Virus record (IMG/VR): IMGVR_UViG_3300043464_002284 | Location: 173,916 to 237,915 of that record | DNA: 64,000 nt | Strand: one strand, 5' to 3' | Shown: positions 29,369-64,000 of the stretch, in pieces | Layout: each line of letters begins with the position of its first letter | Position numbering within the stretch: the stretch's first letter is position 1 | Program-made: the position numbers and the translations under genes | The notes under the pieces: generated by a model | Told to the model about the DNA's origin: nothing | The model's database searches: none | What the model saw: the letters and a program-made list of their open reading frames with translations, nothing else

Positions 29369-29379
29369 TATTTAATTAT

Positions 29380-29991: not shown

Positions 29992-30005
29992 AAATATTCC
30001 TAATA

Positions 30006-33560: not shown

Positions 33561-33604
33561 TGATATGGATTAGTTATAAAGAGGTTATCTGCCCGGCCTG
33601 CATA

Positions 33605-33684
33605 ATATTATTCCTTCTCCATCTGGTTGTCAATGCTTAATTTTTTTAGCAACATCTTGACTTTTTGAAAGATACGATTATACT
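33605..33684. promoter_or_regulatory. Divergent sigma70-type promoter pair driving both arms of the glycosylation island
   Basis: Minus: TTGACA (33633-33628)-17-TAATAT; plus: TTGACT (33657)-16-TATACT. Confidence 0.65.
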
Positions 33685-33735
33685 AATATTGGTTGTCGGT
33701 TTGAAAATTAATACGATTTTTTTAGCGAAAAGGCA

Positions 33736-33933
33736 ATGAAAAAGCAGAATAATGAAGGTGAATGGGACAAGAAGGAAGCAAGAAGAAAAAAGCTTCAGGA
33801 AAAGAGCCTATTTAAGGACGATCCCAAAAACGAAAAAACAGTGTCTCATTCTCTAAAGAAAGAGCTTAAAAAGAAAAAGCAGGAAATAGACGAAGAAGAG
33901 TGGGAAGATTGGGACAGGCATTATAATAGATAA
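33736..33933 (+). CDS. Small charged hypothetical protein
   Basis: K/E-rich. Confidence 0.6.
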   Translation: MKKQNNEGEWDKKEARRKKLQEKSLFKDDPKNEKTVSHSLKKELKKKKQEIDEEEWEDWDRHYNR

Positions 33934-33935
33934 TC

Positions 33936-34190
33936 ATGGAAAAATTTATCGAGGAACTCGGTGCTGGGGACATCTTTGAGGTAGAAAATCAAAGATTTGT
34001 AATAACATCTGATTTTAAGAAAAATGGAGATAGGCTTTGCATAAATCTTAATACTGGAAACGTTAGATGGTTTAAATCAGATTCTCACGTTATTCATATT
34101 AGTCTATATGCAATGGATAATAATAACAATTTTCATCCTATAAAAGAGATTAAATCAGATGTATCTACTAAAATTCAAAGTATTTTTTAA
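33936..34190 (+). CDS. Hypothetical protein
   Basis: Operonic packing. Confidence 0.6.
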   Translation: MEKFIEELGAGDIFEVENQRFVITSDFKKNGDRLCINLNTGNVRWFKSDSHVIHISLYAMDNNNNFHPIKEIKSDVSTKIQSIF

Positions 34191-34407
34191 GTCCTTGCTA
34201 TTTCATGTTTATTCAGGATTCCCAAAATCCACACAACAGCAAATCAACGATAGATACTCTATATGTATATCTTGTGAAAAATTCAATAAACAGAAATCAG
34301 AGTGTTCAGTTTGTGGATGTCTTATAGGAAAGAAAAAAAGATTTCTCAATAAATTAGCATGGGCAGATCAAGAATGCCCGATAGGCAAATGGAATAAACT
34401 CATTTAA
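34159..34407 (+). CDS. Small Cys-rich zinc-binding phage protein
   Basis: RYSICISC...CSVCGC...K...CPIGKW. Confidence 0.7.
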   Translation: MYLLKFKVFFKSLLFHVYSGFPKSTQQQINDRYSICISCEKFNKQKSECSVCGCLIGKKKRFLNKLAWADQECPIGKWNKLI

Positions 34408-34419
34408 TGGAGACCAATA

Positions 34420-34971
34420 ATGCAAACCAAAACAAGACAAAACCAAAACTATTATTTGATCAACAATAACGATATCTTTGAGTGCATCAAAAAAAGAACC
34501 CAAGCAGAAAGTAACGGATCAACAGTTATTGTTCCGCATGTATGTAATAATATTGATTTGTTTGACGCTGGCTTCGCTGGGCAAGTTGCACAATATTATC
34601 CAGAAGTAAAAGCCAATTATCACATGCTTGGAAAAACCTTTTTGAAAAACAATTTAGGACATGCACAAATAATTAAAGTTTATGAGCAACCAAAATACAA
34701 ACACAAACTATATTTTGTTAATATGATTTCTCAGAATGGGGTACGTAGTCCCAAAAATCCAAGACCCTTAAACTATGCGGCTTTAATAAGAAGCATGATC
34801 CATGTTAGTCAATTTATTCATAGTAACACTTCTTTTTTCCAAAAAAACGAAAACGTAGAAATCCATGCTCCTAAATTTGGGAGCGGCCTTGCTGGGGGTA
34901 ATTGGAATTTTATTAATGATTTGATTGATGATATTTGGTCAAAATATTCAGTATACATATATAATCAATAA
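34420..34971 (+). CDS. Macro domain (Appr-1''-p processing; T4 tk.4-like) protein
   Basis: PHVCNN...AGFA, VNMISQ, APKFGSGLAGGNW. Confidence 0.85.
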   Translation: MQTKTRQNQNYYLINNNDIFECIKKRTQAESNGSTVIVPHVCNNIDLFDAGFAGQVAQYYPEVKANYHMLGKTFLKNNLGHAQIIKVYEQPKYKHKLYFVNMISQNGVRSPKNPRPLNYAALIRSMIHVSQFIHSNTSFFQKNENVEIHAPKFGSGLAGGNWNFINDLIDDIWSKYSVYIYNQ

Positions 34972-34985
34972 GATATACTATTATT

Positions 34986-35648
34986 ATGAAAATACTAATT
35001 CTAGGCGGAACACAAATGCTAGGCAGGGATCTCGTTGAAAGATTACGAGATAATACAAATTATGACATAACTTTGGCTAATAGAGGAATAACTAATTCTA
35101 ATATTTTTCCAGAACTTAAACGTATAAAGCTAGATAGAAACAATAAAGAATCCTGTCTAGTATTGTCTAATAACGCTTATGATTATATACTAGATTTTTC
35201 TTGTTATAATTTAGCACAATTTCAAAATACCTGTCACTCAATACGCGGGAATAACTACATATATATATCCACACTTGGTGTTTTTGATGTTTCTGACGAT
35301 AACTACCTAAGTAATGATACTCCATATAGAAGATATATAAACTATTGTATAGACAAAAAAAGTATAGAACAATATATTTCTCAAACAGAATTTGCTTACA
35401 ACATCTTTATTATCAGACCATGTATCATATACGGAGAAAATGACTATACTCAAAGATTTGAACAAAGAAATAACATATACTATTGGAAGGGGACCGACAC
35501 CAAAGCAGACGAAGCAACTAATTGTGTAAATGTCTCAGTTGTTACACAAAAACTAGTAGGAATCTTAGAGAATGAGACCGAAAACAATAACAAAAAACAA
35601 ATTATTAATATAGGAAAAATACCCAATGCTCCAATATCAGCTCAATAG
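34986..35648 (+). CDS. NAD-dependent epimerase/dehydratase (SDR)
   Basis: ILILGGTQMLG, YIYIST, YCIDK, IRPCIIYG. Confidence 0.8.
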   Translation: MKILILGGTQMLGRDLVERLRDNTNYDITLANRGITNSNIFPELKRIKLDRNNKESCLVLSNNAYDYILDFSCYNLAQFQNTCHSIRGNNYIYISTLGVFDVSDDNYLSNDTPYRRYINYCIDKKSIEQYISQTEFAYNIFIIRPCIIYGENDYTQRFEQRNNIYYWKGTDTKADEATNCVNVSVVTQKLVGILENETENNNKKQIINIGKIPNAPISAQ

Positions 35649-36534
35649 AGATCCCAATTTACTTGAATCTCTGAAAGCACACAGCTATATCAATTCAAAT
35701 ATAAATATTGAGTACTACGATACTCCATTCCACCACATCCTTCTGAATAATGTCTTCACCCCTGAAGCATATCAATTATTGTGTGATAATTTTAGCGAAT
35801 ATATTAGCAGAACAGGACCATACAAAGACCAGCCAGGAGCGGTTCATGATTATGCCGGATATATATATGGCTTAAAAACAGCAGATTGTACTAATGGATA
35901 TGATTTCTTTATAAGTCCTATTTGGAAAAATTTTTGTTCTAGTATATTTAACATAGAGACAAATCAATATACTGCACTTAGCGCTCATTGGCATAAATCT
36001 CCAGCTAAACCTGGATTTGTACATAAAGACTTAAATATATGCTCAACATTACCGTCTAACGATGAAAATATTCAACTTACCGGCAATTGTTATTATTCTG
36101 ATGATTCTATAGACACACAACCCAACACCATTAAAATAATACGAAGCATAGCCCTCTTGTTTTATTTTAACAATAAAGACATTTTGGAAGAAAACGACAA
36201 GGGAGGAACAAGCATATATACAAATTGGAATTTTGATAGTTTTGTAAAAGAGATTAAACCAGTTAACAATAGTCTTTTTATATTTGAGGTTTGTCCTGAT
36301 TCTTTTCATGGATTTTCTGGAGCAAATTTCGATAGATCCAGTGTTGTACAATGGTTCCATTCTTCTCCAGCAGCACACCTTCATAGGCATTTAGATCGGG
36401 TCAAATATTATCATAAACACCATAATATGGCATACGAAAGATGGAACAGAAACAATAATCCGTGGCCAATAGAGCATGATGTTGAGTACCATAAATATTT
36501 CCAAAAAGACTTTCACAGTACGCTAAACGATTAG
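35626..36534 (+). CDS. 2OG-Fe(II) oxygenase (prolyl-hydroxylase-like)
   Basis: PFHHILLNNVF, HKD facial motif, GGT, KP..NSLFIF, SFHG, R for 2OG. Confidence 0.8.
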   Translation: MLQYQLNRDPNLLESLKAHSYINSNINIEYYDTPFHHILLNNVFTPEAYQLLCDNFSEYISRTGPYKDQPGAVHDYAGYIYGLKTADCTNGYDFFISPIWKNFCSSIFNIETNQYTALSAHWHKSPAKPGFVHKDLNICSTLPSNDENIQLTGNCYYSDDSIDTQPNTIKIIRSIALLFYFNNKDILEENDKGGTSIYTNWNFDSFVKEIKPVNNSLFIFEVCPDSFHGFSGANFDRSSVVQWFHSSPAAHLHRHLDRVKYYHKHHNMAYERWNRNNNPWPIEHDVEYHKYFQKDFHSTLND

Positions 36535-36555
36535 ACAGAAGACAAAAGAAAAGCA

Positions 36556-36584
36556 TTGCCTAGTCCCAGCGTCCCATGTATAAT
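36556..36584 (+). promoter_or_regulatory. sigma70-type promoter
   Basis: TTGCCT-17-TATAAT. Confidence 0.65.
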
Positions 36585-36623
36585 GTAATACTGGGAAAAG
36601 TCTACACTTTGGAGTAACATATT

Positions 36624-36764
36624 GTGCTTGGTTTTATTCTCGTCCTAACAGCGATATACGCTATCTTGAAAGCCCTTTGTGAAATACATGTCAATAGCAC
36701 AGATCCCTCAAAGAGCGTAAAATCCTCAAAAAACCTAATTTCTTTTTTATTCAATCTGGACTGA
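36624..36764 (+). CDS. Small membrane peptide (46 aa, GTG start, not in track)
   Basis: GGAG 9 nt upstream; MLGFILVLTAIYAILKALCEIHV... Confidence 0.45.
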   Translation: MLGFILVLTAIYAILKALCEIHVNSTDPSKSVKSSKNLISFLFNLD

Positions 36765-36771
36765 ATCCCAA

Positions 36772-37521
36772 ATGTCAAAATCGGCTATCTTTACTACCTA
36801 TTTTTCTCAAAAAAAACACCCTAACGATCCAAATGATCAGGCTGTAATAGGTAGAGGTAACGATGGTAGGGTATTGCAAAACTCAATCAAATACATAGAA
36901 CCTTGGTATGATTCGGTCGATAAGCTCAAAATTAATGGCGTTGTTTTTTACGATAATCTAGATAAAGACTTTATAAAAAAACATGAAACCGACTTGATTA
37001 AGTTCGTAAAAGTAGAGACATCAGAATATTCCAATAACGACTGGAGATTTTTTTGTTATCGTAAATATCTGGAAGACAACCCAGTAGACTCTGTATTTTT
37101 ATCAGATGGCTCAGATGTGATCGTTGTTCAAGAACCGTCCGACATTCTTAAAAAATATCCAGAAACAGACATATTCGTTTGTAAAGACTCAATCAAATTA
37201 TTCCAGTTTCCATACATATCAATACACAGAGAAGCTAAATGGGATGGGTATATATTTTTCTTATTGAACCAATATAAGCTAGATTTAATAAATATGGGTG
37301 TGATTGGCGGCGATTATAGCAATATTATGGATTTCTTGGATAAGTTTTGCCTTACAAGACTACAATTAGGCTCCCCAGATTTTAATTCGGACATGTGGAT
37401 CGGACAGTATGTTTTTAGATATTTAATGCAAAACAAGAATATACTAATTGGAGATCCATTTACCAGTAATTTTAAACAATACGAATACTCTAGAAAGGAT
37501 GTATATTTTATTCACAAATGA
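36772..37521 (+). CDS. GT-A-like putative glycosyltransferase
   Basis: VFLSDGSDVIV and LINMGVIGG, reminiscent of the lysyl-hydroxylase (PLOD) GT domain motifs FTDSYDV/LNSGGFIG. Confidence 0.55.
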   Translation: MSKSAIFTTYFSQKKHPNDPNDQAVIGRGNDGRVLQNSIKYIEPWYDSVDKLKINGVVFYDNLDKDFIKKHETDLIKFVKVETSEYSNNDWRFFCYRKYLEDNPVDSVFLSDGSDVIVVQEPSDILKKYPETDIFVCKDSIKLFQFPYISIHREAKWDGYIFFLLNQYKLDLINMGVIGGDYSNIMDFLDKFCLTRLQLGSPDFNSDMWIGQYVFRYLMQNKNILIGDPFTSNFKQYEYSRKDVYFIHK

Positions 37522-38432
37522 AATTTCATCTTATTAGCGATGGCTCGATACCAGTACCTCCCGTAATGGGATGGGGAGCATTAGAACGTGTAGTCTGGGC
37601 CTATAAAATAGAATTAGAAAAAGCTGGACACGAAGTCCTTATATCTAATCACATAGAAGACTTTATGGTTCTAGAAGACTATCGAAAATTCAAACCAGAC
37701 GTTGTACATAATCATCTAGGTAAGCACTATATGCCATTTAGTATGATGAAAGCACAACACAAGATTTTTACTAATCACGGAGGTGCTTTTAGATATTCAA
37801 TATCTTTTTGGAAAAGCATTTTGCCATTTTTACAAAAATCAAAAGCATTTATATTATCTAATATAGAAGAGTCCTTTTTTTTGGCTAATAATATAGATAC
37901 TCAAATTATGCCTAATGGAGTATTTTGTGATGAGATATCTTTCAACAACCAAGCAAAATATGATGCTTCTATATATCTAGGTAAAATAATGTCTATAAAA
38001 AGACAGGCAATTTTCCAGAGATTGGGTTTAGATGTAGTATATGTAGGAAATCAAGAAGACAGCAATTTTAATTACTCATCAGATAGGTACCTAGGCTCTT
38101 GGAATTACGAACAAGTTAAGGCTAACTTAACCCAATTCAGTAATCTTGTGTTACTCAGCCAGGACGAACTTCAGCCCTTGGTGTGTTTAGAAGCAATGTC
38201 TGCTGGTCTTGGACTAGTATTATCAGAGCCAGCAAGTCAATCACTAGATAAAACCAAACCCTGGATAACAGTAATACCAGAAACAAGAATTCAAGACATA
38301 GACTATATTAATAATACTATATCTAACAATAGACAAATTAGCAATCTAATGAGAACAGAGATTAGAACATATGCAAAAACTTTTGACTGGTCTAATATTA
38401 TTACAAATTACCTATCACAAATCATAATATGA
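37518..38432 (+). CDS. GT4-like glycosyltransferase
   Basis: PVPPVMGWGALERVV; ELQPLVCLEAMSAG (Ex7E); FDW. Confidence 0.8.
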   Translation: MKFHLISDGSIPVPPVMGWGALERVVWAYKIELEKAGHEVLISNHIEDFMVLEDYRKFKPDVVHNHLGKHYMPFSMMKAQHKIFTNHGGAFRYSISFWKSILPFLQKSKAFILSNIEESFFLANNIDTQIMPNGVFCDEISFNNQAKYDASIYLGKIMSIKRQAIFQRLGLDVVYVGNQEDSNFNYSSDRYLGSWNYEQVKANLTQFSNLVLLSQDELQPLVCLEAMSAGLGLVLSEPASQSLDKTKPWITVIPETRIQDIDYINNTISNNRQISNLMRTEIRTYAKTFDWSNIITNYLSQIII

Positions 38433-39100
38433 ACATACAAACAATATTATTTATGTGTAATGATTTCGAACGAGCTTTCTTTACACTACACTCTTTTCGT
38501 AGACATCATTCCAATATCCCAATAAGAGTAATTAATGCTGGTGGTAAAGATCCATCAAAGTATTTATCTTCTATTGGCGTGGAAGTAATAAATACAGACA
38601 ATCTATGGCATAAAAAAACCCACTGCGGTGTTGGATCTTTCAGCCCAGACTTTGCTAATCATCTATTTGAATACGGACTAAATCCTAAATATGACTACAC
38701 TCTATTCCTAGAAACAGATGTCCTAACAAATAGAACCATAAAGATTAAACCAAAGTATCACATCTCTGGGGTAACAAATCCATGTGGACCAAAAGAATCT
38801 ATTCTATATACTCACTTGGGTATTACTAATAATTTCTTACACACAGGATGTGGCGGAACTATCTTTTCTAAAGAATATTTTAGTCATATACATAATACAA
38901 ATTTTCACTTTTTTACTGAAATGTTTATTAAGTATCCGGAAAATTATTTTATGGATCTTATCCTCACCCTGGCTGCTAGAACAGCAGGACTGTCTTTTGG
39001 ATATTGGGAAGAGGTATCTAATATCCCCATACATTTTATTGGAGATAAACAATATAATGCAAACTATAACCAAACACTAGTACATAATTTTAAAATATGA
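38429..39100 (+). CDS. GT-A-like putative glycosyltransferase
   Basis: LFLETDVL DxD-like motif, GCGGTIF; cluster context. Confidence 0.55.
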   Translation: MNIQTILFMCNDFERAFFTLHSFRRHHSNIPIRVINAGGKDPSKYLSSIGVEVINTDNLWHKKTHCGVGSFSPDFANHLFEYGLNPKYDYTLFLETDVLTNRTIKIKPKYHISGVTNPCGPKESILYTHLGITNNFLHTGCGGTIFSKEYFSHIHNTNFHFFTEMFIKYPENYFMDLILTLAARTAGLSFGYWEEVSNIPIHFIGDKQYNANYNQTLVHNFKI

Positions 39101-39930
39101 GCAATCGTTTACTATATATATATCAGAAAGAGAGAGTATTAAAAGTCTATCATGGGGCAGAAGTCTATGAATCCAGAGGTATAATACTTGAAAAGATGAT
39201 AAAAGAAGCAGCAGAGTCTCAGGAGATAAATCAAAACTATAGATTTTTGATTAACACAGATGACTCCCCAATACAACATAATATTAATGGCATATCCTGT
39301 TATTCTTTTAGCACAATAACAAAAGACTACGATCATTGCTGTCCGTGTTATATTTTTCATAGCTGGCCCGAAGTAGGTATCGACAACTATTCTCGTCTGA
39401 CGGATTCCTTTATCGACTCTGAACCAGAATCATCAAAAGTTGGATGGATAGGACATCCAATGAGTATACCAAGAAAAATATTTAACGCTTATTATTCTAA
39501 CACATATTTTAGTCAAAGCCTAATTAATGATTGGAATAGATCAGACCCAAAACAACTACATATTCACACTAAAACATATTTGACTTTTCAGCAACAAATA
39601 GACAAATGGAAATACCTGATAGACTTCGAAGGAGCAGGATATTCTGGCAGAACTAAAATTTTATTAAATTCTCCTAGAATTGTTTTCTTTGTGGATCGAG
39701 AATATCAAGAATTTTGGCAGAAAAAATTAATACCCTGGAAACATTATGTTCCAGTTAAAAAAGACCTATCTGATCTGGAAGAAAACTACTCTAAAATAGA
39801 AAAAGATAAAGATTTACAACGATATATTAAAAATGAACAAAAACAATTTTGTCAAGAAAATCTTTTATACAAACACGCTATCCTTGAACTACAAAGAATA
39901 ATTAAAGAAAATATATATGTTGAAAGCTAA
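39097..39930 (+). CDS. GT90 / CAP10 domain glycosyltransferase
   Basis: KWKYLIDFEGAGYSGR, EFW...LIPWKHYVPVKKDLSDL. Confidence 0.85.
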   Translation: MSNRLLYIYQKERVLKVYHGAEVYESRGIILEKMIKEAAESQEINQNYRFLINTDDSPIQHNINGISCYSFSTITKDYDHCCPCYIFHSWPEVGIDNYSRLTDSFIDSEPESSKVGWIGHPMSIPRKIFNAYYSNTYFSQSLINDWNRSDPKQLHIHTKTYLTFQQQIDKWKYLIDFEGAGYSGRTKILLNSPRIVFFVDREYQEFWQKKLIPWKHYVPVKKDLSDLEENYSKIEKDKDLQRYIKNEQKQFCQENLLYKHAILELQRIIKENIYVES

Positions 39931-40930
39931 AATTATAGGTTGTGGACTAAGTGGTGTAACATCAGCAATTATCCTCAAAGAACGAGGATATGATGTGGAA
40001 ATATTTGATAGTAGAAGTCATATAGCCGGAAATTGTTATGACACAAAAGAAAATGATGTAACTGTACACAAGTACGGAGCACATATATTCCACACAAACG
40101 ATGAAGAGGTTTGGAGATTTTTAAATAGATACACATCTTTTAATTCTTATTCACACAAAGTAAGAGCTAATACTGACTATGGTTTAATTTCTATTCCCTA
40201 TAACTACCTTACACGCGATCAGATAGGAAAAGATTTAAGTCCGGAAGAAATACAGAAAACTATTTTTGTTGACTATTCTGAAAGACACTGGGGTATACCG
40301 TGGAAAGATCTGCCAAAATCTATTTCCTCAAGATTACCAAATAAGAGAGAGAACTATGACGATAGATACTTTACAGATAAATATCAAGGTATTCCATCTC
40401 TTGGATATACTTCTATGTTTTCAAATATGCTGGATGGTATAAAAGTAAATCTAGATGTACCAAAAAACCTTTACAAAAAAATTCTTAGAGATAACAATTA
40501 TGACATATTAGTATATACAGGCAAGCCAGATGATTATTTTGAATATTGTTATGGAGAACTAGAATATAGATCTCTCAAATTTGAGCATACTATCGCACCA
40601 AAGAATGGTCTATTTTCTTGGGAAAACGGGGCAGTAATTAATGAATGCAATAAATTATTATATAACAGAACTGTTGATAACTCTGTATTTTTAAATGAAG
40701 AAGTTAATCATACAGTATACACACGAGACTATCCAGAAGAACACAATAGCACCAACGACCCTATCTATCCCAAAAATTTTGGAAGTCACAACGATAAATA
40801 TAGCTTATATAACAGGCTGATGCATCAACAGAATAAAACAATATTTGTTGGAAGATTAGCTACTTATAAATATCTTGATATGTGGATGGCTATTAAACAA
40901 GTTTTTCAAAAACTAGAATTTAATATATGA
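39917..40930 (+). CDS. glf: UDP-galactopyranose mutase
   Basis: GCGLSG, HIAGNCYD, HKYGAHIFHT, WG, YFTDKYQGIP, LEYRSL, YTR, GRLATYKYLDM. Confidence 0.95.
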   Translation: MLKAKIIGCGLSGVTSAIILKERGYDVEIFDSRSHIAGNCYDTKENDVTVHKYGAHIFHTNDEEVWRFLNRYTSFNSYSHKVRANTDYGLISIPYNYLTRDQIGKDLSPEEIQKTIFVDYSERHWGIPWKDLPKSISSRLPNKRENYDDRYFTDKYQGIPSLGYTSMFSNMLDGIKVNLDVPKNLYKKILRDNNYDILVYTGKPDDYFEYCYGELEYRSLKFEHTIAPKNGLFSWENGAVINECNKLLYNRTVDNSVFLNEEVNHTVYTRDYPEEHNSTNDPIYPKNFGSHNDKYSLYNRLMHQQNKTIFVGRLATYKYLDMWMAIKQVFQKLEFNI

Positions 40931-40943
40931 GTTATGAAATAAT

Positions 40944-42251
40944 TTAAAAATTATTCCTTTCATAAAAACACATATATTCTTGATGTCCAATATTTCTGTA
41001 CTTGTTATTTATCTCATCAAAATGAGAATAAAACTTATACAAAAACTTATACATATCAGATACAGAAGCAATAAAAATATTATCTATACCCATTACAGGA
41101 TTATTAGAAATAAACTTTATCCTTTCTCCGTCTGTAGATAAATGCAGAGGAGTATTTTGATTTATAAAATCTATAATTTGGTGTTTTTTCAAAGGAAAAG
41201 GATTAGATAATATGTCAAATCGGAATTGTATAACTTTCTCGTTAGGATCGGTATTGTTATATAGATATTCTGCTATTTTTGCTTTACCGTATAACATATT
41301 TTTAAAACCTTTAACTGGGCACCTAGTACTACCAACAAATCCATCAAGATCACCTAATAGTTCTATATTGTTATCATCGTCTATTATAACATGTTTTATC
41401 TTAGCAGAAATATGCTCTCCAAAATAATTTCTAATGACGTTCTCATCAATCATAGAGTAGTCGTTGCTCATAGCTCGGTAACTAAGACTATTCTGTACAA
41501 TATTCCAAGAATGCACGTATATATTAACATCAAAGCTGCAAGAAATATCATCAATCAAATCCTTTAAATCTTTATTCAAAAAAGAATTTCTAATATGTCC
41601 TCTTAAAATAATATTTAATTTAGGTTTTGCAAAAGGAACTATAGGTAAGAAAGTAGCATCTGATAAAAATAGAGCACCCTCATCTTTTTCGTCTACTCTT
41701 AGAAAACCGCTTTGATGTCTTAAATATTTATTAGAATTAACAAGCTTTAAAGATATATGCCAAAAATTATACAAACCATTAACAACACTAAAATTTGCTA
41801 CTTCAGATAAATTAGATGTTAATGTAATTTTATTTTGACTATCAACAGAAAAAAATAAACCAGGATATTCTACAGACTCCAACTGAACATATTGGTCACC
41901 ACTAACGTCAGTTACTGGAATAAACCTAAACTGAAAAGCTTGATGAACATAATGAGTTAACTTAAAATCAGTTTTTTTAAATTTAAAATGCAAATTACTA
42001 GCACATATATATGAATTATATGTTGTATGACATTGTAGAATTAGCGGATCATACAACTTTAATTTACCTGGAACTACTAAAGACCCAACAGGAAAATAAA
42101 TGTCATTTGAATTAGTTTCTTTTGTCATATCCTTTTTTTCTATTTCTGGCTTTTTTTTTACATCGAGATTGGTTGTCTTAATTGTTTTTTTATTCCACCA
42201 TAAAAACATATAATAGATCTTTTTTATAAAAACGTTATGAATCAATATCAT
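40944..42251 (-). CDS. AbfB/CBM42-like beta-trefoil fused to a C-terminal GT-like domain
   Basis: LESVEYPG, KYLRHQSGFLRV...LFLSDATF (AbfB repeats); C-terminal IILRGHIR, VYVHSW, RFD. Confidence 0.7.
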   Translation of the reverse strand: MILIHNVFIKKIYYMFLWWNKKTIKTTNLDVKKKPEIEKKDMTKETNSNDIYFPVGSLVVPGKLKLYDPLILQCHTTYNSYICASNLHFKFKKTDFKLTHYVHQAFQFRFIPVTDVSGDQYVQLESVEYPGLFFSVDSQNKITLTSNLSEVANFSVVNGLYNFWHISLKLVNSNKYLRHQSGFLRVDEKDEGALFLSDATFLPIVPFAKPKLNIILRGHIRNSFLNKDLKDLIDDISCSFDVNIYVHSWNIVQNSLSYRAMSNDYSMIDENVIRNYFGEHISAKIKHVIIDDDNNIELLGDLDGFVGSTRCPVKGFKNMLYGKAKIAEYLYNNTDPNEKVIQFRFDILSNPFPLKKHQIIDFINQNTPLHLSTDGERIKFISNNPVMGIDNIFIASVSDMYKFLYKFYSHFDEINNKYRNIGHQEYMCFYERNNF

Positions 42252-42291
42252 ATATTCTCATTTTACACCATTAATTCACAATATCTCACGA

Positions 42292-42319
42292 TTGACAGAA
42301 AACAGACTTTCAGTATTAT
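42292..42319 (+). promoter_or_regulatory. sigma70-type promoter
   Basis: TTGACA-16-TATTAT; divergent GGTGTAAA on the minus strand at 42262-42269. Confidence 0.65.
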
Positions 42320-42345
42320 AAGACATACCAAGGAGAAAACAAGAC

Positions 42346-42876
42346 ATGAATAGGTTGGAGAATCAAAGAGTTTATTTAGCAGGGGCAATGGACAGAGTGG
42401 CTGATCGTGGTGCTACTTGGAGAGACAATATTACTCCATTTTTGACCGAAATGGGCATAGTAGTTTTTAATCCAATAAGCAAACCAACAGATGTAGGCTT
42501 GGAAGATCAAGATACACATACCATCAAAACCAAGCTTAAAGAAAAAGGCAGATACGACGAACTTTCTGCTATGATGAAAATGATTCGATCCGTAGATCTA
42601 AGATTAGTCGATATTAGTGATTTTATGATAGTTAATTTAGACCTTAATGTACATCCTTGTGGTACACTGGAAGAAATTTTTTGGGCTAACCGACAAAAAA
42701 AACCTATCATAGTACATATGGTTCAAGGTAAAAACCAAACGCCAGACTGGCTATTTGGAACAATCCCTCACCAACTAATTTTCTCAACATGGGAAGAAAT
42801 ACAGTCTTATTTGATACATATTCATTCTGCCGAAAACATAGACACTCACAAAAGATGGTATTTTTTTTCAGTATAA
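42346..42876 (+). CDS. Nucleoside 2-deoxyribosyltransferase-like protein
   Basis: RVYLAGAM, WR, VFNP, DLRLVDISDF, GTLEE...A....KP. Confidence 0.8.
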   Translation: MNRLENQRVYLAGAMDRVADRGATWRDNITPFLTEMGIVVFNPISKPTDVGLEDQDTHTIKTKLKEKGRYDELSAMMKMIRSVDLRLVDISDFMIVNLDLNVHPCGTLEEIFWANRQKKPIIVHMVQGKNQTPDWLFGTIPHQLIFSTWEEIQSYLIHIHSAENIDTHKRWYFFSV

Positions 42877-42890
42877 TTTAAGTAGACCAT

Positions 42891-43091
42891 ATGCCCAAAT
42901 ACTATGTTCAGTCTGGACAGATTAAGACAGTAATAGATAGACTAAATCATAAAACAGCAATACTAGATGTTTTACGAGAGCATAGAGGCAAAGGTATGCT
43001 AACTGTTGAAAAAATATGCTTAAGCGAAACCGGATGGACTGCGGACTTAAAATGTTATGATGTTGACCCTTATTTAAAACTAATACAATGA
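42891..43091 (+). CDS. Hypothetical protein
   Basis: Operonic packing. Confidence 0.6.
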   Translation: MPKYYVQSGQIKTVIDRLNHKTAILDVLREHRGKGMLTVEKICLSETGWTADLKCYDVDPYLKLIQ

Positions 43092-43492
43092 TTCAAACAA
43101 TATTTCAAATACAAGACAATATTATTGTTGGGGACTCTAAAATTCACGGTCGTGGAGTTTTTGCTACCAAAGACATACCAGAAGGCACCGTAATAGAAAA
43201 GTGTCCAATGTTAAAACTAGATTTCCCATCAAAATATCATGCTGATCTTAAAGTTCTAGACTACGCCTTTGCTAGACCATCTGAAGCAAATTGGCAGGAC
43301 CACGGATGGGATCTTTATTTGATGATGGGATACGGGATGATGTATAATCATCAAGATATTCCTAACTCATCCATTTCTTTCGATTATGAAAAGAATATAG
43401 CCCAGATAACCGCAACACAATATATTAAAGAAAATTCAGAAATCTACATATCATACGGACCAATGTATTTCCTCAACAAAAAGAAGATATAA
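43088..43492 (+). CDS. SET domain protein (putative lysine methyltransferase)
   Basis: SKIHGRGVFATKDIPEG, MMYNHQDIPN, EIYISYG. Confidence 0.9.
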   Translation: MIQTIFQIQDNIIVGDSKIHGRGVFATKDIPEGTVIEKCPMLKLDFPSKYHADLKVLDYAFARPSEANWQDHGWDLYLMMGYGMMYNHQDIPNSSISFDYEKNIAQITATQYIKENSEIYISYGPMYFLNKKKI

Positions 43493-43496
43493 TACT

Positions 43497-44180
43497 ATGA
43501 ATACAAATAAAATATACGATAAAGTTTTTAATGAAGTCATAATAGCAATTAAAGACGAATACATAACAAAGATAGGAGGAGAAGAGTATGTGGCTAACAA
43601 CCATCATCAGGCTTCGACTCAAGCACACGATGGTTCTATCAAACAAATAGATATCCAACACCTACCACAACTAATCAATAAAAAAATTAGAAACTACCTA
43701 GAAATAGGATCCTATATAGGGGTGAGTTTTAGAATACTTAATGAAATTTTCAGTCCGGATGTTTGTTATTCTGTAGACCCTAACATACCACACAGGGTCT
43801 TTGCAAAACCCAGGAATGTTTTTAGAAAGCTTAATAGTAGCTATTTAAATAAAACAACTTTGCTTGATGCTTATTGGGTACAAGGAGGAAGTCCCACAAT
43901 AGATTCATCATATTTTACTCAATTAGGAATTCAGTTTGATCTTATTTTTATAGATGCTATGCACACATACGAATCTGTAAAATCTGATTTTTTTGAAGCA
44001 ATAAAAATCTTGTCCCCTGATGGTTTAGTATTATTGCATGACGTATACACTTGGCCAGAGGTTGGGCAATTTGTTGAGGAATTAGCATCAGACGATACGT
44101 ATATTATCAAGTACTCTCCTAAAGATGTTGCTATAGACGGATTTTGTACCATAGGCATAAATTATGCAAAAAATAATTAA
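43497..44180 (+). CDS. Class I SAM-dependent methyltransferase (Methyltransf_24-like)
   Basis: YLEIGSYIG, FDLIFIDAMHTYESVKSD, LSPDGLVLLHD. Confidence 0.9.
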   Translation: MNTNKIYDKVFNEVIIAIKDEYITKIGGEEYVANNHHQASTQAHDGSIKQIDIQHLPQLINKKIRNYLEIGSYIGVSFRILNEIFSPDVCYSVDPNIPHRVFAKPRNVFRKLNSSYLNKTTLLDAYWVQGGSPTIDSSYFTQLGIQFDLIFIDAMHTYESVKSDFFEAIKILSPDGLVLLHDVYTWPEVGQFVEELASDDTYIIKYSPKDVAIDGFCTIGINYAKNN

Positions 44181-45294
44181 TGAAATCAAGTTAGATTTTG
44201 ACGATGTCTTAATAAGACCAAAGAGATCAACACTCTCAAGTAGATCAGAAGTTAATCTAATTAGAGACTTCCACTTCAAGAATTCTCCAAGAAAAATTTC
44301 CGCTATACCAGTAGTAGTGGCTAATATGGATACTACCGGAACATTCCGTATGGCGAACGTGGTTTGTGAGAATCAAGCCATGGTGGCATTACACAAACAC
44401 TATAAACCAGAACAACTAATAGAATATTATTGTAGCAGTACTAATGATCATAAAGAACTAACGTTTTATTCCACAGGAACATCGTCTTCAGATATTGAAA
44501 AACTTACATATGTTTTCAATGCCATAAAAAATAAAGGATGTCTACTACCCAATATCTGTGTTGATGTTGCTAATGGATATAGTGAAAAATTTGTAAAAAC
44601 AGTAGCTCACATCAGAAAACTATATGAAGAAATAGTAATAATGGCCGGTAATGTCGTCACACCAGAAATGGTGGAAGAGCTTATTTTACATGGTAGGGTC
44701 GATATAGTAAAAGTTGGCATAGGACCAGGGTCGGTTTGTACTACCAGATTAAAAACGGGCGTAGGATACGCACAAATATCAGCTTGTTTGGAATGTTCGG
44801 ACGCTGCTCATGGTCTTGGTGGACACATTTGTGGAGATGGTGGATGTAAACACGTTGGAGATATTTGTAAAGTTTTTGGTAGTAATGCTGATTTTGTAAT
44901 GTGTGGAAACTTTTTCGCTGGATGTGAAGAATGCGAAGGAGAATGGGAATACGAATATCAGGCTGGAGTCGGCGTGGCATTAGCAGAGCCATTCTGGCAA
45001 CCATTTGATCCTGGGACTGGCGGCCCCAAAAGAAAGAAGAACCTAAAATTTTATGGAATGAGTAGCAAAGAAGCTATGGAAAAACATAATAATGGAGTTG
45101 CTAACTATAGAACAAGCGAAGGAAGATGCGTTACGGTTCCATATAAAGGACATGTTGAAGATGTTTTACTAGATATCTTTGGCGGACTAAGAAGCGCATG
45201 TACATACATTGGAGCATCTAAAATGAAAGATTTTGGTAAAAAAACCACATTCGTAATGGTCAACAATACTCATACAAAGACGTACGACAAATGA
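44164..45294 (+). CDS. guaC: GMP reductase
   Basis: LDFDDVLIRPKRS, ANMDT, ICVDVANGY, MAGNV, VGIGPGSVCTTR, CGDGG, FYGMSS, YRTSEG, GGLRSACTYIG. Confidence 0.95.
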   Translation: MQKIINEIKLDFDDVLIRPKRSTLSSRSEVNLIRDFHFKNSPRKISAIPVVVANMDTTGTFRMANVVCENQAMVALHKHYKPEQLIEYYCSSTNDHKELTFYSTGTSSSDIEKLTYVFNAIKNKGCLLPNICVDVANGYSEKFVKTVAHIRKLYEEIVIMAGNVVTPEMVEELILHGRVDIVKVGIGPGSVCTTRLKTGVGYAQISACLECSDAAHGLGGHICGDGGCKHVGDICKVFGSNADFVMCGNFFAGCEECEGEWEYEYQAGVGVALAEPFWQPFDPGTGGPKRKKNLKFYGMSSKEAMEKHNNGVANYRTSEGRCVTVPYKGHVEDVLLDIFGGLRSACTYIGASKMKDFGKKTTFVMVNNTHTKTYDK

Positions 45295-46364
45295 CAAAAA
45301 TCAACCTATCTTGTCCAATTAACCAAACTGGTTATGGTATTTCATCTTTAAATATTCTCAAAGAGTTAATTCAAATATCTGAATTAAGTTATTTGCCTAT
45401 CGGGCAACCTTCTGTTGGAACTCAAGAAGACTACAACATAATACAGTCACTCCTAAACAATCAAGATTTAGCAAATATTAATTCGCCATTTATCAAGATT
45501 TGGCACCAGTTCGATCTTGGTACTCGTTTTGGTCGTGGTAAATATTTTGCATTTCCCTTTTTTGAACTAGATACATTCAACACCAGAGAAAAGCAGCATC
45601 TATCTGTTCCAGATGTTTTATTTGCCACCTCTGAGTGGGCAAAAAACGTAATGACCAATAACGATATAACCACACCCATAGAAGTAATACCTCTGGGAGT
45701 TGATATGTCTATTTTTAATTATCTTGAAAACCCAAAACAGACTGACAAATACATATTTTTAAATATTGGTAAATGGGAAGTTAGAAAAGGTCACGATATT
45801 TTACATGAATTATTTAAAAAAGCTTTTCCAAATGAAACAGATGTAGAGTTATGGGTGCTGGCGTCAGAAACTACTAATTCTTATTCTAGTGAAGAACAAT
45901 TAGTTGAATGGAAAAACTTATATAGTAATGATAACAGAATTAAAATATCTTCTGGAGTTACATCACAAAAAGAAATAGCTCAAATTATGTCGCAAGCTAG
46001 TTGTGGTATTTTTCCTTCCAGAGCAGAGGGATGGAATTTAGAACTATTGGAAATGATGGCCATGAATAAACCAGTTATAGCAACTAACTACTCCGCACAT
46101 ACCGAGTTTTGTGATAAAAATAATTCCTATTTAGTAGATATTGAAACAACAGAACCGGCTAATGATAAGAAGGCATTTTATGGTCAAGGCAATTGGGCTA
46201 AATTAGGCCAAAATCAACAAGATCAGATTATTGAACATATGAGATATGTTTATCAAAACAAGATTCTCACCAACACGTCGGGACTAACAACGGCTAAAAT
46301 CTTTTCTTGGAAAAATTCGGCCAGTAAAATTTTGAGGTGTATACAAGAGTATACAGGAGAATAA
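45291..46364 (+). CDS. GT4 glycosyltransferase
   Basis: TGYG, FLNIGKWEVRKG, PSRAEGWNLELLEMMAMNKPVIATN, FSW. Confidence 0.9.
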   Translation: MTKINLSCPINQTGYGISSLNILKELIQISELSYLPIGQPSVGTQEDYNIIQSLLNNQDLANINSPFIKIWHQFDLGTRFGRGKYFAFPFFELDTFNTREKQHLSVPDVLFATSEWAKNVMTNNDITTPIEVIPLGVDMSIFNYLENPKQTDKYIFLNIGKWEVRKGHDILHELFKKAFPNETDVELWVLASETTNSYSSEEQLVEWKNLYSNDNRIKISSGVTSQKEIAQIMSQASCGIFPSRAEGWNLELLEMMAMNKPVIATNYSAHTEFCDKNNSYLVDIETTEPANDKKAFYGQGNWAKLGQNQQDQIIEHMRYVYQNKILTNTSGLTTAKIFSWKNSASKILRCIQEYTGE

Positions 46365-57495: not shown

Positions 57496-57496
57496 A

Positions 57497-57829: not shown

Positions 57830-57886
57830 TTGGAATGTATGGTGTAGTCTATTGTAGACGCATTCTGTATATGTTTAGGAAACACT

Positions 57887-58798: not shown

Positions 58799-58816
58799 TT
58801 TTTAAAGAAATATTTT

Positions 58817-61876: not shown

Positions 61877-61893
61877 TTGTAGGTAAAATTATA

Positions 61894-63051
61894 ATGGCAG
61901 AAATAGACATTAATAAAAGTAAACCAGATAAAGAAGTAGATAATAGCGACTTGTTCGTTAATTATCCATTTCAAGGACAAGGAAGAACTGATGGGGATAC
62001 TCCAGCAGAAATAGATAGATTAAATAATTTTGCTAATTTATTAGCTGGTAGGTTTTTTAGATCAAACAGAAATCCTGTCAATACTCCTACTCCTACTCCT
62101 AGTTACGGGGCTCCACCTACTCCAACCCCAACAAATAGTAGAACACCCACACAAACCAGAACTCCAACCCCAACCTTAACACCAACACAATCGGTCACCC
62201 CCACCTTAACAGTAACTCCCACAAGCACAATAACTCCTACGCTAACCGCATCTGTAAGTCCCACAAATACTCCGACGAATACTCCAACAGCAACAACCAC
62301 TCCTACTCCAACAGCTACTAGTACGGCTACGCCAACGGCTACGGCTTCAGCTACGCCAACAGTTACACCAACCAACACGCCAACTAACACACCAAGCGTT
62401 ACTGCAACGCCAACAGCAACAAATACAGCTACCCCAACCGTTACGCCAACAGTTACGCCAACGGCTACAGCGTCAGCTACTCCAACAGCCACAGTATCGG
62501 CTACTCCAACTAACACTTCAAGCGCCACACCTACTGTAACTCCAACGGCCACGGCTTCGGCTACTCCGACATCTACAGTAACCGCAACTCCAACTGAAAC
62601 TCCAACAGCTACCCCAACCAACACGCCAACTAACACACCAAGCATAACACCCACAGAAACTCCTACTAATACTCCGTCGGTAACGCCTACTAACACATCA
62701 ACAGTCACAGCTACTCCAACAGCCACCCCAACCCCATCAGCATACTCTGGTTTTGATGTATATCTTGGCATAACATCAGGGAACTATGTTTCTGGCGGCG
62801 GAGTAACTCTATATGGAGCAACTGGTAGTCGTTTATATTTTGACGAGCTATCTTCGATTAATAATCCTTTGAACTTTACAGAAATTAGATTATACATAAA
62901 CAATACATATACTTATCGAATGACGGTATTCACTGAAATCATAACGGCAAACCTACCATTTGTATTAATATCTAGTACTGGTGTCGTATATCAGTCTAGT
63001 TTTGGGGCAGGATATAGTGTTGGAGCAGATAGGAGAATAGATTTAGTCTAA
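61894..63051 (+). CDS. Mucin-like Pro/Thr-repeat protein
   Basis: About 200 residues of TP/TAT/TVT repeats between globular ends. Confidence 0.85.
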
Positions 63052-63062
63052 ACGGATATAAT

Positions 63063-64000
63063 ATGAAACAAGATAAACAAATAATAGACGACCTATCTGC
63101 TTTATATGTACCACCAGCTCCGGGCGGCGGTCCACCTCCAGGCGGACCTCCACCCCCACCAGGACCGGGTGGGTATGTCGGCCAACCATGGAATATTAAT
63201 GCTGGTAAAATTTTAACAGAATATCTAGGCACTGATATTATTTCTATTGACTCTTTAAATAGTTTACAGTATATAGATAAAATTTGTAAATATGTTAATG
63301 GTTCTCTTATTTGCTGGGATGGGGACGAGCCATCTTTTTTAAGAGGTTTTAGTACATTAGATCCTAATACTGGTTATTTAATATTATCTAAAAGTTCTGC
63401 TGTCTTTCCTTATGTTATCTGGTACTACGATCCTGTAGTTCCATCAACGAGATCCATAACATCAGCTTATCAGATAGTCACATACCTAGGTTCTGAATTA
63501 GTATTAGATGACAACCCAGACTTTATCAATAACATTGTCAAAATTTTTAATCTCAACAATAACAGTCCGTTAACATGGATTAAAGCAGAACCATCTTTTG
63601 CTCAAGGGTTTGGTTCTTTGGAGTACGGCAAGACCTACTTATTTGTAAGCTCCAACACACCGTACTTGCTATATAATAGTGTCACGCCTACCCCAACAGC
63701 CACACAAACACAAACTCCTACAATCACGCCAACCAGCACGGCTACGCCAACAGCCACAGCGTCAGCTACTCCAACAGCAACAGCCACGGTAACTCCAACT
63801 GAAACCCCAACAGTTACCCCAACCGAAACACCTACTAACACGCCCAGTGTAACTCCCACTGAAACACCAACAGCAACCAGCACGGCTACGCCAACAGCCA
63901 CAGCGTCAGCTACTCCAACAGCAACAGCCACGGTAACTCCAACTGAAACCCCAACAGTTACCCCAACCGAAACACCTACTAACACGCCCAGTGTAACTCC
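63063..64000 (+). CDS. Second mucin-like Pro/Thr-repeat protein, 3'-partial (not in track)
   Basis: Open from ATG 63063 to the window end; Pro/Gly N-terminus, duplicated YLG...I.KI...N...W...EPSF..GF..L...Y domain, then TP repeats. Confidence 0.85.
63731..64000 (+). repeat. Exact 144-bp intragenic tandem duplication (48 codons)
   Basis: aaccagcacggctacgcc... starts at 63731 and 63875; identical to the window end. Confidence 0.9.

What the first reader, a model, noticed from the sequence alone, without database searches (positions are those of the whole stretch)
61894..64000. Consecutive mucin-like TP-repeat proteins with an ongoing 144-bp expansion
Two adjacent genes carry hundreds of Thr/Pro residues. 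The first has synonymously diverged repeats; the second has an exact 48-codon duplication, indicating recent length change. Such stalks are typically stiffened by O-glycans, making them the obvious substrates of the island and a length-variable, possibly immune- or protease-shielding virion coat.
Basis: partly seen in the sequence, partly recalled or inferred. Interest (0 to 1): 0.6.

Follow-up and report, generated by a model that had tools for sequence, protein, structure and literature searches.

The report
Thr-Pro linker fibre proteins of a lake phage
Two neighbouring genes of a 238-kb lake-water phage encode modular sugar-binding proteins whose domains are joined by long Thr-Pro spacers that vary in length between related phages and are probably sugar-coated by a phage enzyme related to the one that starts mucin-type glycans in protists.

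Summary
Gene 1 (61894-63051, 385 aa) has a 224-residue linker that is 63% Thr+Pro and synonymously scrambled. Gene 2 (63063 onward) has an exact 144-bp tandem repeat.

The window is the last 64 kb of a 237,915-bp phage contig, and the contig breaks inside that repeat. Gene 2 runs on at the contig start and is about 1016 aa:
- an N-terminal module
- TP linker
- a mini-domain
- TP linker
- an RCC1 propeller
- a LecA-type lectin
- an Ig-like end

The repeat junction appears in contigs of four independent runs. K-mer depth suggests about six copies, not two, so the assembly collapsed the repeat.

These are spacer-linked modular adhesins, not wholly mucin-like proteins. Close relatives keep the folded domains and change linker length (gene 1: 305-408 aa).

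The glycosylation idea gains real but indirect support. The island holds a soluble GT60-type (PF11397) enzyme. TP-coding stretches were found in every phage record tested that carries this enzyme and in none of 12 jumbo phages without it. Of 21 large TP-positive viral contigs, 14 carry it. XacN1, a cultured carrier, has stained virion glycoproteins.

Virion location rests on gene context only. An immune-shield role is unsupported.

The parts
61894..63051 (+). Gene 1, 385 aa: conserved N-terminal region, TP linker, conserved C-terminal domain
   Evidence: ORF. Homologues of 258-408 aa have conserved ends.
61894..62070 (+). Gene 1 N-terminal region (residues 1-59), with one predicted helix
   Evidence: Conserved in 4 of 5 homologues. 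Replaced by another domain in P0002.
62071..62742 (+). Gene 1 TP linker (residues 60-283): 95 Thr and 46 Pro, synonymously scrambled
   Evidence: No predicted secondary structure. It is 80 aa shorter in the 92%-identical orthologue P0043.
62743..63048 (+). Gene 1 C-terminal domain of about 100 aa, beta-rich, function unknown
   Evidence: 82-92% identical across homologues. No Pfam or PDB match. The structure model failed.
63063..64000 (+). Gene 2, 5' part (312 aa). The gene continues at contig bases 1-2194 (L001:2-2194)
   Evidence: A contig of run X3 reads from 63897 into the contig-start sequence.
63063..63170 (+). Gene 2 Pro/Gly-rich N-terminus (residues 1-36), no signal peptide
   Evidence: Translation. 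Conserved in L002 and P0006.
63171..63680 (+). Gene 2 N-terminal module (residues 37-206): two tandem beta-rich subdomains; candidate docking module
   Evidence: 38 cluster representatives, N-terminal in nearly all of them, with varied C-terminal parts. AF2 pLDDT 96. No solved fold match.
63681..64000 (+). Gene 2 first TP linker, which contains the tandem repeat
   Evidence: The linker differs in length in P0005, P0006, P0007 and L002.
63730..63873 (+). 144-bp (48-codon) repeat unit, copy 1
63874..64000 (+). Copy 2, first 127 nt, cut by the contig end. K-mer depth suggests about six copies in the population.
30662..31936 (-). GT60-type (Pfam PF11397) glycosyltransferase, soluble, with an LDSHH (DxH) motif; candidate initiating enzyme for the TP linkers
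   Evidence: Pfam E 3.9e-76. Sequence. Co-occurrence tests.
26293..46364 (.). Glycosylation island: GT1/GT4-like, GT90-like and HtrL/YibB-like enzymes, FkbM methyltransferases, an epimerase, UDP-galactopyranose mutase (39917-40930) and an AbfB-domain protein

Best explanation
The two ORFs are the first members of a block of about 30 kb that encodes 'beads-on-a-string' proteins in a 238-kb tailed phage from lake water.

Role of the TP stretches. They are long, unstructured and probably extended spacers, not the business end of the proteins. They tether glycan-binding or other binding modules to conserved N-terminal modules that most likely dock the protein on the virion as accessory fibres. In gene 2 the binding modules are an RCC1 propeller, a LecA/PA-IL-type lectin and an Ig-like end. 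In gene 1 it is a conserved 100-aa beta domain.

Length variation. Linker length changes quickly by in-frame gain and loss of repeat units. The exact 144-bp tandem array in gene 2 is a young, still recombination-prone array of at least 2 and probably about 6 copies. The gene 1 linker is an old, codon-scrambled and therefore more stable version. Each 48-residue unit would add roughly 15 nm of reach if extended (inference from polyproline-II geometry).

Glycosylation. The linkers are probably O-glycosylated in the infected cell's cytoplasm. The likely initiator is the phage's soluble GT60-type enzyme, a relative of the polypeptide alpha-GlcNAc transferases that start mucin-type glycans on Thr in protists. 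The other island enzymes, including a galactofuranose supply and methyltransferases, would extend the glycan.

Shown:
- the gene structures
- the repeat
- the domain identities
- length variation among relatives
- co-occurrence of TP linkers with the GT60-type gene

Inferred:
- virion location
- glycosylation itself
- its stiffening or protease-protecting effect
For: Architecture:
- Gene 2 wraps the contig junction and reads N-module, TP, mini-domain, TP, Ig-like, RCC1, lectin, Ig-like.
- RCC1: Pfam E 4.6e-68.
- Lectin: 40% identity to the gene 3 segment that passes Pfam PA-IL. A profile of the two segments hits LecA at E 2e-4 and PllA at E 4e-3 over the whole domain.
- The next gene (1236 aa) has five TP stretches, four of them between propeller, PA-IL, DUF642 and Ig-like modules and one at its C-terminal end.
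- At least eight ORFs in the genome carry TP stretches.

Modularity:
- The gene 2 N-module is N-terminal in nearly all of its 38 cluster representatives. It is fused to RCC1, FG-GAP, LamG, DUF285, RTX or FGE-type domains.
- Orthologue P0006 (81% identical in the N-module) lacks the RCC1 domain.
- The gene 1 C-terminal domain occurs with a different N-terminal domain in P0002.

Length variation.

Reality of the repeat and its copy number.

Virion context:
- Downstream ORFs hit PHROGs named baseplate wedge, virion structural, Hoc-like and minor tail.
- An upstream ORF has a tail-tip domain.
- In an unrelated contig, an N-module protein lies 7 genes upstream of a tape-measure gene.
- Neither protein has a signal peptide.

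Glycosylation:
- PF11397 hit at E 3.9e-76, with a DxH motif and no membrane anchor.
- Only 4 of 50,697 GenBank phage records carry a homologue. The three I tested have 22-51 TPTxTPT-coding sites each.
- All 12 jumbo phages without the gene have none. They include the nearest outgroups and a phage of the same host genus.
- 14 of 21 IMG/VR contigs of at least 90 kb, picked only for TP coding, carry PF11397. Only 3 of the 21 have a terminase close to this phage's.
- XacN1 virions contain at least two Schiff-stained glycoproteins. Its authors named ORF334, the homologue, as one of the phage's two glycosyltransferases, which they suggest may make these glycoproteins (PMC5852040).
- GT60 enzymes start Thr-linked mucin-type glycans in Dictyostelium and T. 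cruzi (PMC8724618, PMC3769586).
Against: - There is no direct evidence that either protein is in the particle. The block lies about 115 kb from portal and terminase.
- The PHROG hits of the neighbours are to shared Ig/LamG-type domains, not to whole proteins.
- There is no direct evidence of glycosylation.
- Half of the near-complete TP-positive contigs (4 of 8) lack PF11397, so TP linkers do not require this enzyme.
- The GT60-positive isolates are one clade, and many of the IMG/VR contigs may be related to each other. The number of independent lineages is therefore small.
- The N-module has no known fold, so 'docking module' is inferred from position only.
- The copy number of about six rests on the depth of two short unitigs. 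Co-occurring strains that share the unit could inflate it.
Confidence: 0.55

Rival explanations
1. The 144-bp duplication is an assembly artefact: a contig end that ran back on itself. The true gene would have one copy.
For: The duplication sits exactly at the contig end. The last 127 nt, a common largest k-mer of metagenome assemblers, repeat earlier sequence. The 81-nt 'terminal repeat' that made IMG/VR call the record complete follows from that.
Against: A unit-to-unit junction needs reads that contain it. A 41-nt loop-closing unitig exists in X1 at depth 65. X3 has the 163-nt unitig that runs across the unit-to-unit junction. X6 and X7 show the unit's tail in front of its head. The depth ratios of 6.1 and 5.3 fit n and n-1 copies.
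Confidence: 0.05
2. The TP stretches are plain, unglycosylated flexible spacers. The glycosyltransferase island serves another target, such as the capsid or tail proteins, host envelope glycans or DNA.
For: PT/TP linkers work as spacers without sugar in many recombinant proteins (my own knowledge). 4 of 8 near-complete TP-positive viral contigs lack PF11397. The island lies 16-35 kb from the genes. Phage glycosyltransferases often modify DNA or host O-antigen (PMC12619734).
Against: Characterised PF11397/GT60 enzymes modify proteins on Thr or hydroxyproline. The TP pattern was present in every GT60-positive record tested and in 0 of 12 GT60-negative jumbo phages. 14 of 21 TP-selected contigs carry the gene, against 4 of 50,697 GenBank phages.
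Confidence: 0.25
3. The proteins are not virion parts. They would act in or on the infected cell or after lysis, for example as lectin-bearing adhesins that bind cell debris, particles or host glycans. The same would hold for the other large modular proteins of the block.
For: The block is far from portal and terminase. There is no whole-protein match to any known structural protein. The N-module fold is unknown.
Against: There is no signal peptide or membrane segment that could export them. The neighbours carry domains that annotated phages use in baseplate, fibre and head-decoration proteins. A TP-rich 1833-aa protein lies inside the main structural region. An N-module homologue lies in a tail gene array.
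Confidence: 0.15
4. Proline, not threonine, is the modified residue. The island's 2OG-Fe(II) oxygenase would hydroxylate Pro, and the GT60-type enzyme would add GlcNAc to hydroxyproline, as in the Skp1 pathway.
For: The founding member of PF11397 acts on hydroxyproline of Skp1 and is cytoplasmic like this enzyme (my own knowledge). A 2OG oxygenase lies in the island.
Against: The oxygenase match is weak (28.9 bits against a cut-off of 27). A homologue was found only in the close relative G001. It was found in none of the other 24 TP-positive or GT60-positive records, including a complete genome of the same clade.
Confidence: 0.08

Closest known systems
Pro/Thr-rich ('PT') interdomain linkers of bacterial cellulases and other modular carbohydrate-active proteins
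   Same: Low-complexity Thr/Pro runs lie between independently folding modules, some of them carbohydrate-binding. Length varies among homologues. In native hosts such linkers are O-glycosylated, which protects them from proteases (my own knowledge).
   Different: Here they are in a phage, in proteins without export signals. They reach 224 residues or more. They come with a phage-encoded glycosylation island and, in one case, a young exact tandem array.
Mucin-type O-glycosylation started by GT60 polypeptide alpha-GlcNAc transferases (Dictyostelium, Trypanosoma cruzi)
   Same: The enzyme belongs to the same Pfam family (E 3.9e-76) and has a DxH motif. The candidate substrates are Thr-rich repeat regions. 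A galactofuranose supply is present, and some T. cruzi strains carry Galf on the Thr-linked GlcNAc (PMC3769586).
   Different: The protist enzymes are Golgi membrane proteins, while this one is soluble. Neither activity nor substrate was tested. The organism is a bacteriophage.
Virion glycosylation in phages: mycobacteriophages (Freeman et al. 2023, cited in PMC12619734) and Xanthomonas phage XacN1 (PMC5852040)
   Same: Phage-encoded glycosyltransferases and glycosylated virion proteins occur together. XacN1 carries a 49.5%-identical homologue of this enzyme and many TP-coding stretches. One of these is in a 3313-aa protein just after its baseplate wedge genes.
   Different: In mycobacteriophages the sugars sit on C-terminal tails of capsid and tail-tube subunits and other enzyme families are used. 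In XacN1 the glycoproteins were only stained, not identified.
Modular phage fibre or decoration proteins with a conserved N-terminal anchor and exchangeable distal binding domains (for example Hoc-like proteins, tail fibres)
   Same: A conserved N-terminal module is joined to varied C-terminal binding domains. Domains are swapped between close relatives. The neighbours carry Ig, fn3, LamG and lectin domains.
   Different: There is no homology to any known anchor domain. There is no trimeric coiled-coil or beta-helix shaft; a TP spacer takes the place of a shaft.

Membership tests
PT/TP interdomain linker | Low-complexity region dominated by Thr and Pro, without regular secondary structure | tested here: met
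   Gene 1 residues 60-283 are 63% Thr+Pro. The model has no helix or strand there.
PT/TP interdomain linker | Lies between independently conserved folded domains | tested here: met
PT/TP interdomain linker | Length varies among homologues while the flanking domains are conserved | tested here: met
   Gene 1 is 305-408 aa in homologues. Gene 2 linker 1 varies.
Mucin-like (PTS) glycoprotein domain | Dense O-glycosylation of Ser/Thr | not testable with these tools
   Needs mass spectrometry or glycan staining. Only indirect co-occurrence evidence is available.
Mucin-like (PTS) glycoprotein domain | Tandem repeats rich in Pro, Thr and Ser make up the bulk of the protein | tested here: not met
   TP stretches are 58% of gene 1. 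In gene 2 they are only about a quarter of roughly 1016 aa, and the rest is folded domains.
GT60 / PF11397 polypeptide GlcNAc transferase (island enzyme, 30662-31936) | Significant match to the family model over the catalytic domain | tested here: met
   E 3.9e-76, 257 bits against a cut-off of 21.
GT60 / PF11397 polypeptide GlcNAc transferase (island enzyme, 30662-31936) | DxH metal-binding motif | tested here: met
   LDSHH at residues 100-104. That this is the catalytic motif comes from my own knowledge of GT27/GT60 enzymes.
GT60 / PF11397 polypeptide GlcNAc transferase (island enzyme, 30662-31936) | Transfers GlcNAc to Thr or Hyp of a polypeptide | not testable with these tools
   Needs an enzyme assay.
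RCC1-like seven-bladed propeller (gene 2) | Seven RCC1 repeats matching the Pfam models | tested here: met
   PF25390 E 4.6e-68. PF00415 matches 7 stretches.
PA-IL / LecA lectin (gene 2 residues about 850-950) | Match to the family over the whole domain | tested here: inconclusive
   There is no direct Pfam hit. The region is 40% identical to the gene 3 segment that passes PA-IL. A two-sequence profile hits LecA at E 2e-4 over LecA residues 23-117.
Phage tail fibre / receptor-binding protein | Homology to a known fibre or anchor domain, or presence in the virion | tested here: not met
   Neither protein has a Pfam or PHROG structural hit. The N-module has no fold match. Only gene context supports this role.
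Serine-rich repeat adhesins of Gram-positive bacteria | Signal peptide, LPXTG anchor, accessory Sec system | tested here: not met
   No signal peptide or anchor is seen in the translations. The only PDB similarity is compositional.

The most novel reading that the evidence does not exclude
Several lineages of jumbo phages carry a self-contained, cytoplasmic, mucin-type O-glycosylation system. A soluble GT60-family polypeptide GlcNAc transferase would start glycans on Thr-Pro linkers of virion fibre proteins, and island enzymes (galactofuranose, methylated sugars) would extend them. Linker length, and with it fibre reach, would be tuned by gain and loss of tandem units. TP-linker content would then be a genomic marker for glycosylated phage particles.
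Probability: 0.4. Interest if true: 0.75.

Novelty: new variant of a known kind. Interest (0 to 1): 0.55.

Why it matters
- Protein glycosylation of phage particles is known from very few systems, and its substrates are mostly unidentified. A sequence marker (TP linkers) paired with a specific enzyme family would make the question testable at once in a cultured phage: XacN1 has the enzyme, TP proteins and stained glycoproteins.
- The case is a practical warning. The 'direct terminal repeat' that marks this IMG/VR record as complete is a by-product of a tandem repeat inside a gene. The gene's true length is under-reported, and relatives' contigs break at the same place.
- Rapidly length-variable spacers that carry lectin modules suggest a simple way for phages to adjust how far their adhesins reach through host surface layers.

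Tried and rejected
- Structure of gene 1 from a 5-sequence alignment: pLDDT 36.7, unusable.
- Fold of the gene 2 N-module: the model is excellent (pLDDT 96). Foldseek against PDB and BFVD gave nothing at E <= 0.001, and VIA-align gave Z <= 4.1. The ESM Atlas gave only unnamed bacterial proteins (TM 0.74) and generic tandem beta-sandwich modules. No function can be read from the fold.
- Language-model look-alikes of the N-module scored below 0.9 and were unnamed.
- Sequence searches of PDB with gene 1 gave only compositional hits (circumsporozoite protein, a serine-rich adhesin). Searches with the N-module gave nothing. The lectin region alone did not find LecA; only the two-sequence profile did.
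- PDB sequence searches with the GT60-type enzyme and the 2OG oxygenase found nothing.
- Prolyl-hydroxylase route: the oxygenase does not travel with the GT60-type gene or the TP linkers outside close kin.
- Megablast of the region against GenBank phages found no match. The terminase is at most 26% identical to any isolate's, so there is no cultured relative.
- Membership in the 'moraphage' lineage (PMC12619734): none of the marker genes named there that I checked (DnaK, glutamine synthetase) is present. No evidence of membership.
- A within-clade contrast in IMG/VR using XacN1's DNA polymerase returned only short contigs. I used GenBank outgroups instead.
- Promoter and terminator scans were at chance level.
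- The minus-strand 'VGV' ORFs over the TP regions are mirror images of the repeats, not genes.

The joined gene 2 sequence (window end plus contig start) was built only inside a local script to read the frame and domain order and for a BLAST against this genome's own ORFs. All database, family and fold searches used the two pieces by reference, and the joined protein was sent to no search tool.
Full report
**What is in the sequence**

The two ORFs exist as described. Gene 1 (61894-63051) encodes 385 aa. Residues 60-283 hold 95 Thr and 46 Pro. Identical hexapeptides within this stretch share only 38% of their codons, and the longest exact DNA repeat is 30 nt.

Gene 2 starts at 63063 and is still open at base 64000. 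Tandem Repeats Finder reports a 144-bp unit in 1.9 copies at 100% identity over 63730-64000.

**Where the window ends**

The window is the last 64 kb of a single 237,915-bp contig. IMG/VR classes this contig as a virus record with direct terminal repeats. It comes from lake water.

The last 127 nt of the contig repeat 63730-63856, and the first 81 nt of the contig equal the last 81. The contig start continues the repeat unit from its base 47 through the first 19 bases of a further unit, then leaves it for unique sequence. The assembly therefore broke inside the tandem repeat, and the 81-nt 'terminal repeat' follows from that.

Read across the junction, gene 2 is about 1016 aa with two copies of the unit and ends at contig base 2194. 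I made this join only in a local script. Every external search used the two pieces by reference.

**Is the duplication real?**

Yes. Logan's k=31 contigs give exactly the graph expected of a tandem array:

| Run | Feature | Position | Depth |
|---|---|---|---|
| X1 | flank contig, stops 30 nt into the unit | to 63759 | 12.2 |
| X1 | 163-nt unitig (one unit plus 19 nt) | 63730-63892 | 74.5 |
| X1 | 41-nt unitig that closes the loop | 63863-63903 | 65 |
| X3 | 163-nt unitig | 63730-63892 | 74.8 |
| X3 | flank | | about 12.8 |

- For n full copies, the 163-nt unitig should be n times the flank depth and the 41-nt unitig n-1 times. The observed ratios are 6.1 and 5.3.
- X6 (2016) and X7 (2020) carry the last 11 letters of the unit directly before its first base.
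- The unit's 31-mers occur nowhere else in this genome.
- An X3 contig runs from 63897 into the unique sequence at the contig start, which confirms the join.
- The array is therefore real and has at least two copies, probably about six. Co-occurring strains that share the unit could inflate the estimate, and only long reads can settle it.
- A related IMG/VR contig (L002) also ends inside the TP region of its gene 2.

**What the proteins are**

Gene 2 is not a mucin. In order it has:
- a Pro/Gly-rich start
- an N-terminal module (residues 37-206)
- TP linker 1, which contains the repeat
- a roughly 35-aa mini-domain
- TP linker 2
- an Ig-like segment
- a seven-bladed RCC1-like propeller (Pfam E 4.6e-68)
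- a lectin domain
- an Ig-like end

The lectin domain is 40% identical to the segment of the next gene that passes Pfam PA-IL. A profile of the two segments finds P. aeruginosa LecA (E 2e-4) and Photorhabdus PllA (E 4e-3) over the whole domain.

The next gene (1236 aa) has five TP stretches; four join two propellers, a PA-IL domain, a DUF642 domain and Ig-like domains, and the fifth is at its C-terminal end. At least eight ORFs of the genome carry such stretches.

Gene 1 has a conserved N-terminal region of about 60 aa, the linker, and a conserved 100-aa beta-rich C-terminal domain. That domain has no family or PDB match, and its model failed.

**Modularity and length change**

- The gene 2 N-module defines a family of 38 cluster representatives. 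It is N-terminal in nearly all of them, and the rest of the protein varies: RCC1, FG-GAP, LamG, DUF285, RTX and FGE-type domains.
- Its model is confident (pLDDT 96): two tandem beta-rich subdomains. No solved structure resembles it.
- The complete orthologue P0006, from an 83-kb scaffold with the same gene order, is 611 aa. It lacks the RCC1 domain and the 48-residue duplication.
- Other close homologues have other linkers and a LamG-type end.
- Gene 1 homologues measure 258, 305, 316, 364, 385 and 408 aa. The 92%-identical orthologue P0043 differs from gene 1 mainly by 80 missing linker residues. P0003 has a small Cys-containing insert within the linker. P0002 has a different N-terminal domain on a 35-residue linker.
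- The linkers are thus the places where length and domain content change.

**What kind of virus, and is this a structural region?**

Terminase, portal and tail-fibre genes identify a tailed phage. No isolate is close: terminase identity is at most 26%, and megablast found no match.

The TP block lies far from portal and terminase. Evidence for a structural context:
- Its downstream neighbours hit PHROGs named baseplate wedge subunit, virion structural protein, Hoc-like head decoration and minor tail protein.
- An upstream ORF has a phage tail-tip domain.
- A 1833-aa protein that is 30% Thr+Pro lies in the main structural region.
- In an unrelated contig, a member of the N-module family lies seven genes upstream of a tape-measure gene.
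- Neither protein has a signal peptide.

This is context, not proof, of a place on the particle.

**The glycosylation idea**

The island (about 26-46 kb in the window) encodes several glycosyltransferases, FkbM methyltransferases, an epimerase, UDP-galactopyranose mutase and an AbfB-domain protein.

One enzyme (30662-31936) matches Pfam PF11397 at E 3.9e-76. It is soluble and has an LDSHH motif. By my own knowledge PF11397 corresponds to CAZy GT60. GT60's characterised members add GlcNAc to hydroxyproline of Skp1 or start mucin-type glycans on Thr in Dictyostelium and T. cruzi (PMC8724618, PMC3769586).

Co-occurrence tests:
- Forward test. Only four GenBank phage records, one clade of Xanthomonas and Stenotrophomonas jumbo phages, carry a homologue at about 49% identity. 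The three I tested have 22-51 TPTxTPT-coding sites each, with 0 in the reversed-pattern control.
- Negative controls. Twelve jumbo phages without the gene have none. They include the nearest outgroups RsoM2USA and SCTP-2, the RaK2 group, and XbC2 from the same host genus.
- Reverse test. Of 21 IMG/VR contigs of at least 90 kb picked only for a (TPTx)3TPT-coding stretch, 14 carry PF11397. Only three of the 21 have a terminase close to this phage's.
- Experimental precedent. XacN1 virions contain at least two Schiff-stained glycoproteins, and its authors suggested that the phage's two glycosyltransferases, one of them the homologue ORF334, may make them. XacN1 ORF325 (3313 aa, with TP stretches) follows the baseplate wedge genes and precedes the transferases (PMC5852040).

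Limits:
- The independent lineages are few.
- Four of eight near-complete TP-positive contigs lack the enzyme.
- Nothing here shows a sugar on a linker.
- The alternative route through hydroxyproline is not supported. The island's 2OG oxygenase is a weak match and is absent from all other carriers except one close relative.

**Verdict**

The array is real, probably longer than assembled, and sits at an assembly break.

Length-variable TP regions and a probable link to the island stand. 'Mucin-like proteins' should be 'modular lectin-bearing proteins with TP spacers'. 'Virion coat' should be 'probable accessory fibres, unproven'. 'Immune shielding' has no support.

The kind of thing is known: PT linkers, modular phage adhesins, phage virion glycosylation. 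What may be new is the pairing of TP linkers with a GT60-type enzyme across jumbo phages. I found no paper that describes it.

Noticed in passing
window 57887-58798 and 58817-61876 (+): Two proteins (303 and 1019 aa) directly upstream of gene 1 are unusually rich in Cys. They carry dozens of CC..G.CYDP..C..C-type motifs and have no Pfam or PHROG match. Both are conserved, with the same order, in relatives (L002:2741-6408; L014 has an 898-aa ORF).
   Followed up: partly
contig ends: window 63920-64000 and contig 1-81: IMG/VR classes the record as having direct terminal repeats and as 100% complete. The 81-nt overlap is a by-product of the 144-bp tandem repeat inside gene 2. The join itself is confirmed by an independent run, but the true length of the genome and of the gene is under-reported.
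   Followed up: yes
window 22747-23751 (+): An actin-fold protein matches Pfam Volactin (E 2.7e-62) and, more weakly, MreB. A subtilase (24110-25060) lies just downstream.
   Followed up: no
window 3951-5195 (+): Full-length DUF1501 protein (E 1.8e-103), an unusual gene for a phage. An ATP-dependent DNA ligase (5747-7102) and an HNH protein follow.
   Followed up: no
contig 81204-100883 (-), 54827-62599 (-), 62608-69303 (-): Giant ORFs of 6560, 2591 and 2232 aa lie next to a 1833-aa protein that is 30% Thr+Pro (72851-78349). All are on the strand of the portal and terminase genes.
   Followed up: partly
window 39917-42251: UDP-galactopyranose mutase lies next to a 435-aa protein with an AbfB (furanoside-binding) domain on the opposite strand. 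This suggests that the island makes, and perhaps recognises, galactofuranose-containing glycans.
   Followed up: no
window 48008-48676 (+): A phage-encoded protein has a sigma-70 region 4. It lies between the island and the tail-tip-domain gene (51960-53348).
   Followed up: no
L012:4037-7693 and 13190-14692: In an unrelated metagenome contig, a 1218-aa protein with the gene 2 N-module, an RCC1 propeller and DUF285 lies seven genes upstream of a tape-measure gene.
   Followed up: partly
Some of the contigs are labelled as giant-virus MAGs. Several lie at the very ends of contigs, as expected if they break assemblies.
   Followed up: partly
window 2223-2295 and 11600-11675: Two tRNA genes, Ile (anticodon TAT) and Leu (anticodon TAA). 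Both read A-ending codons, which fits the 35% G+C genome.
   Followed up: no
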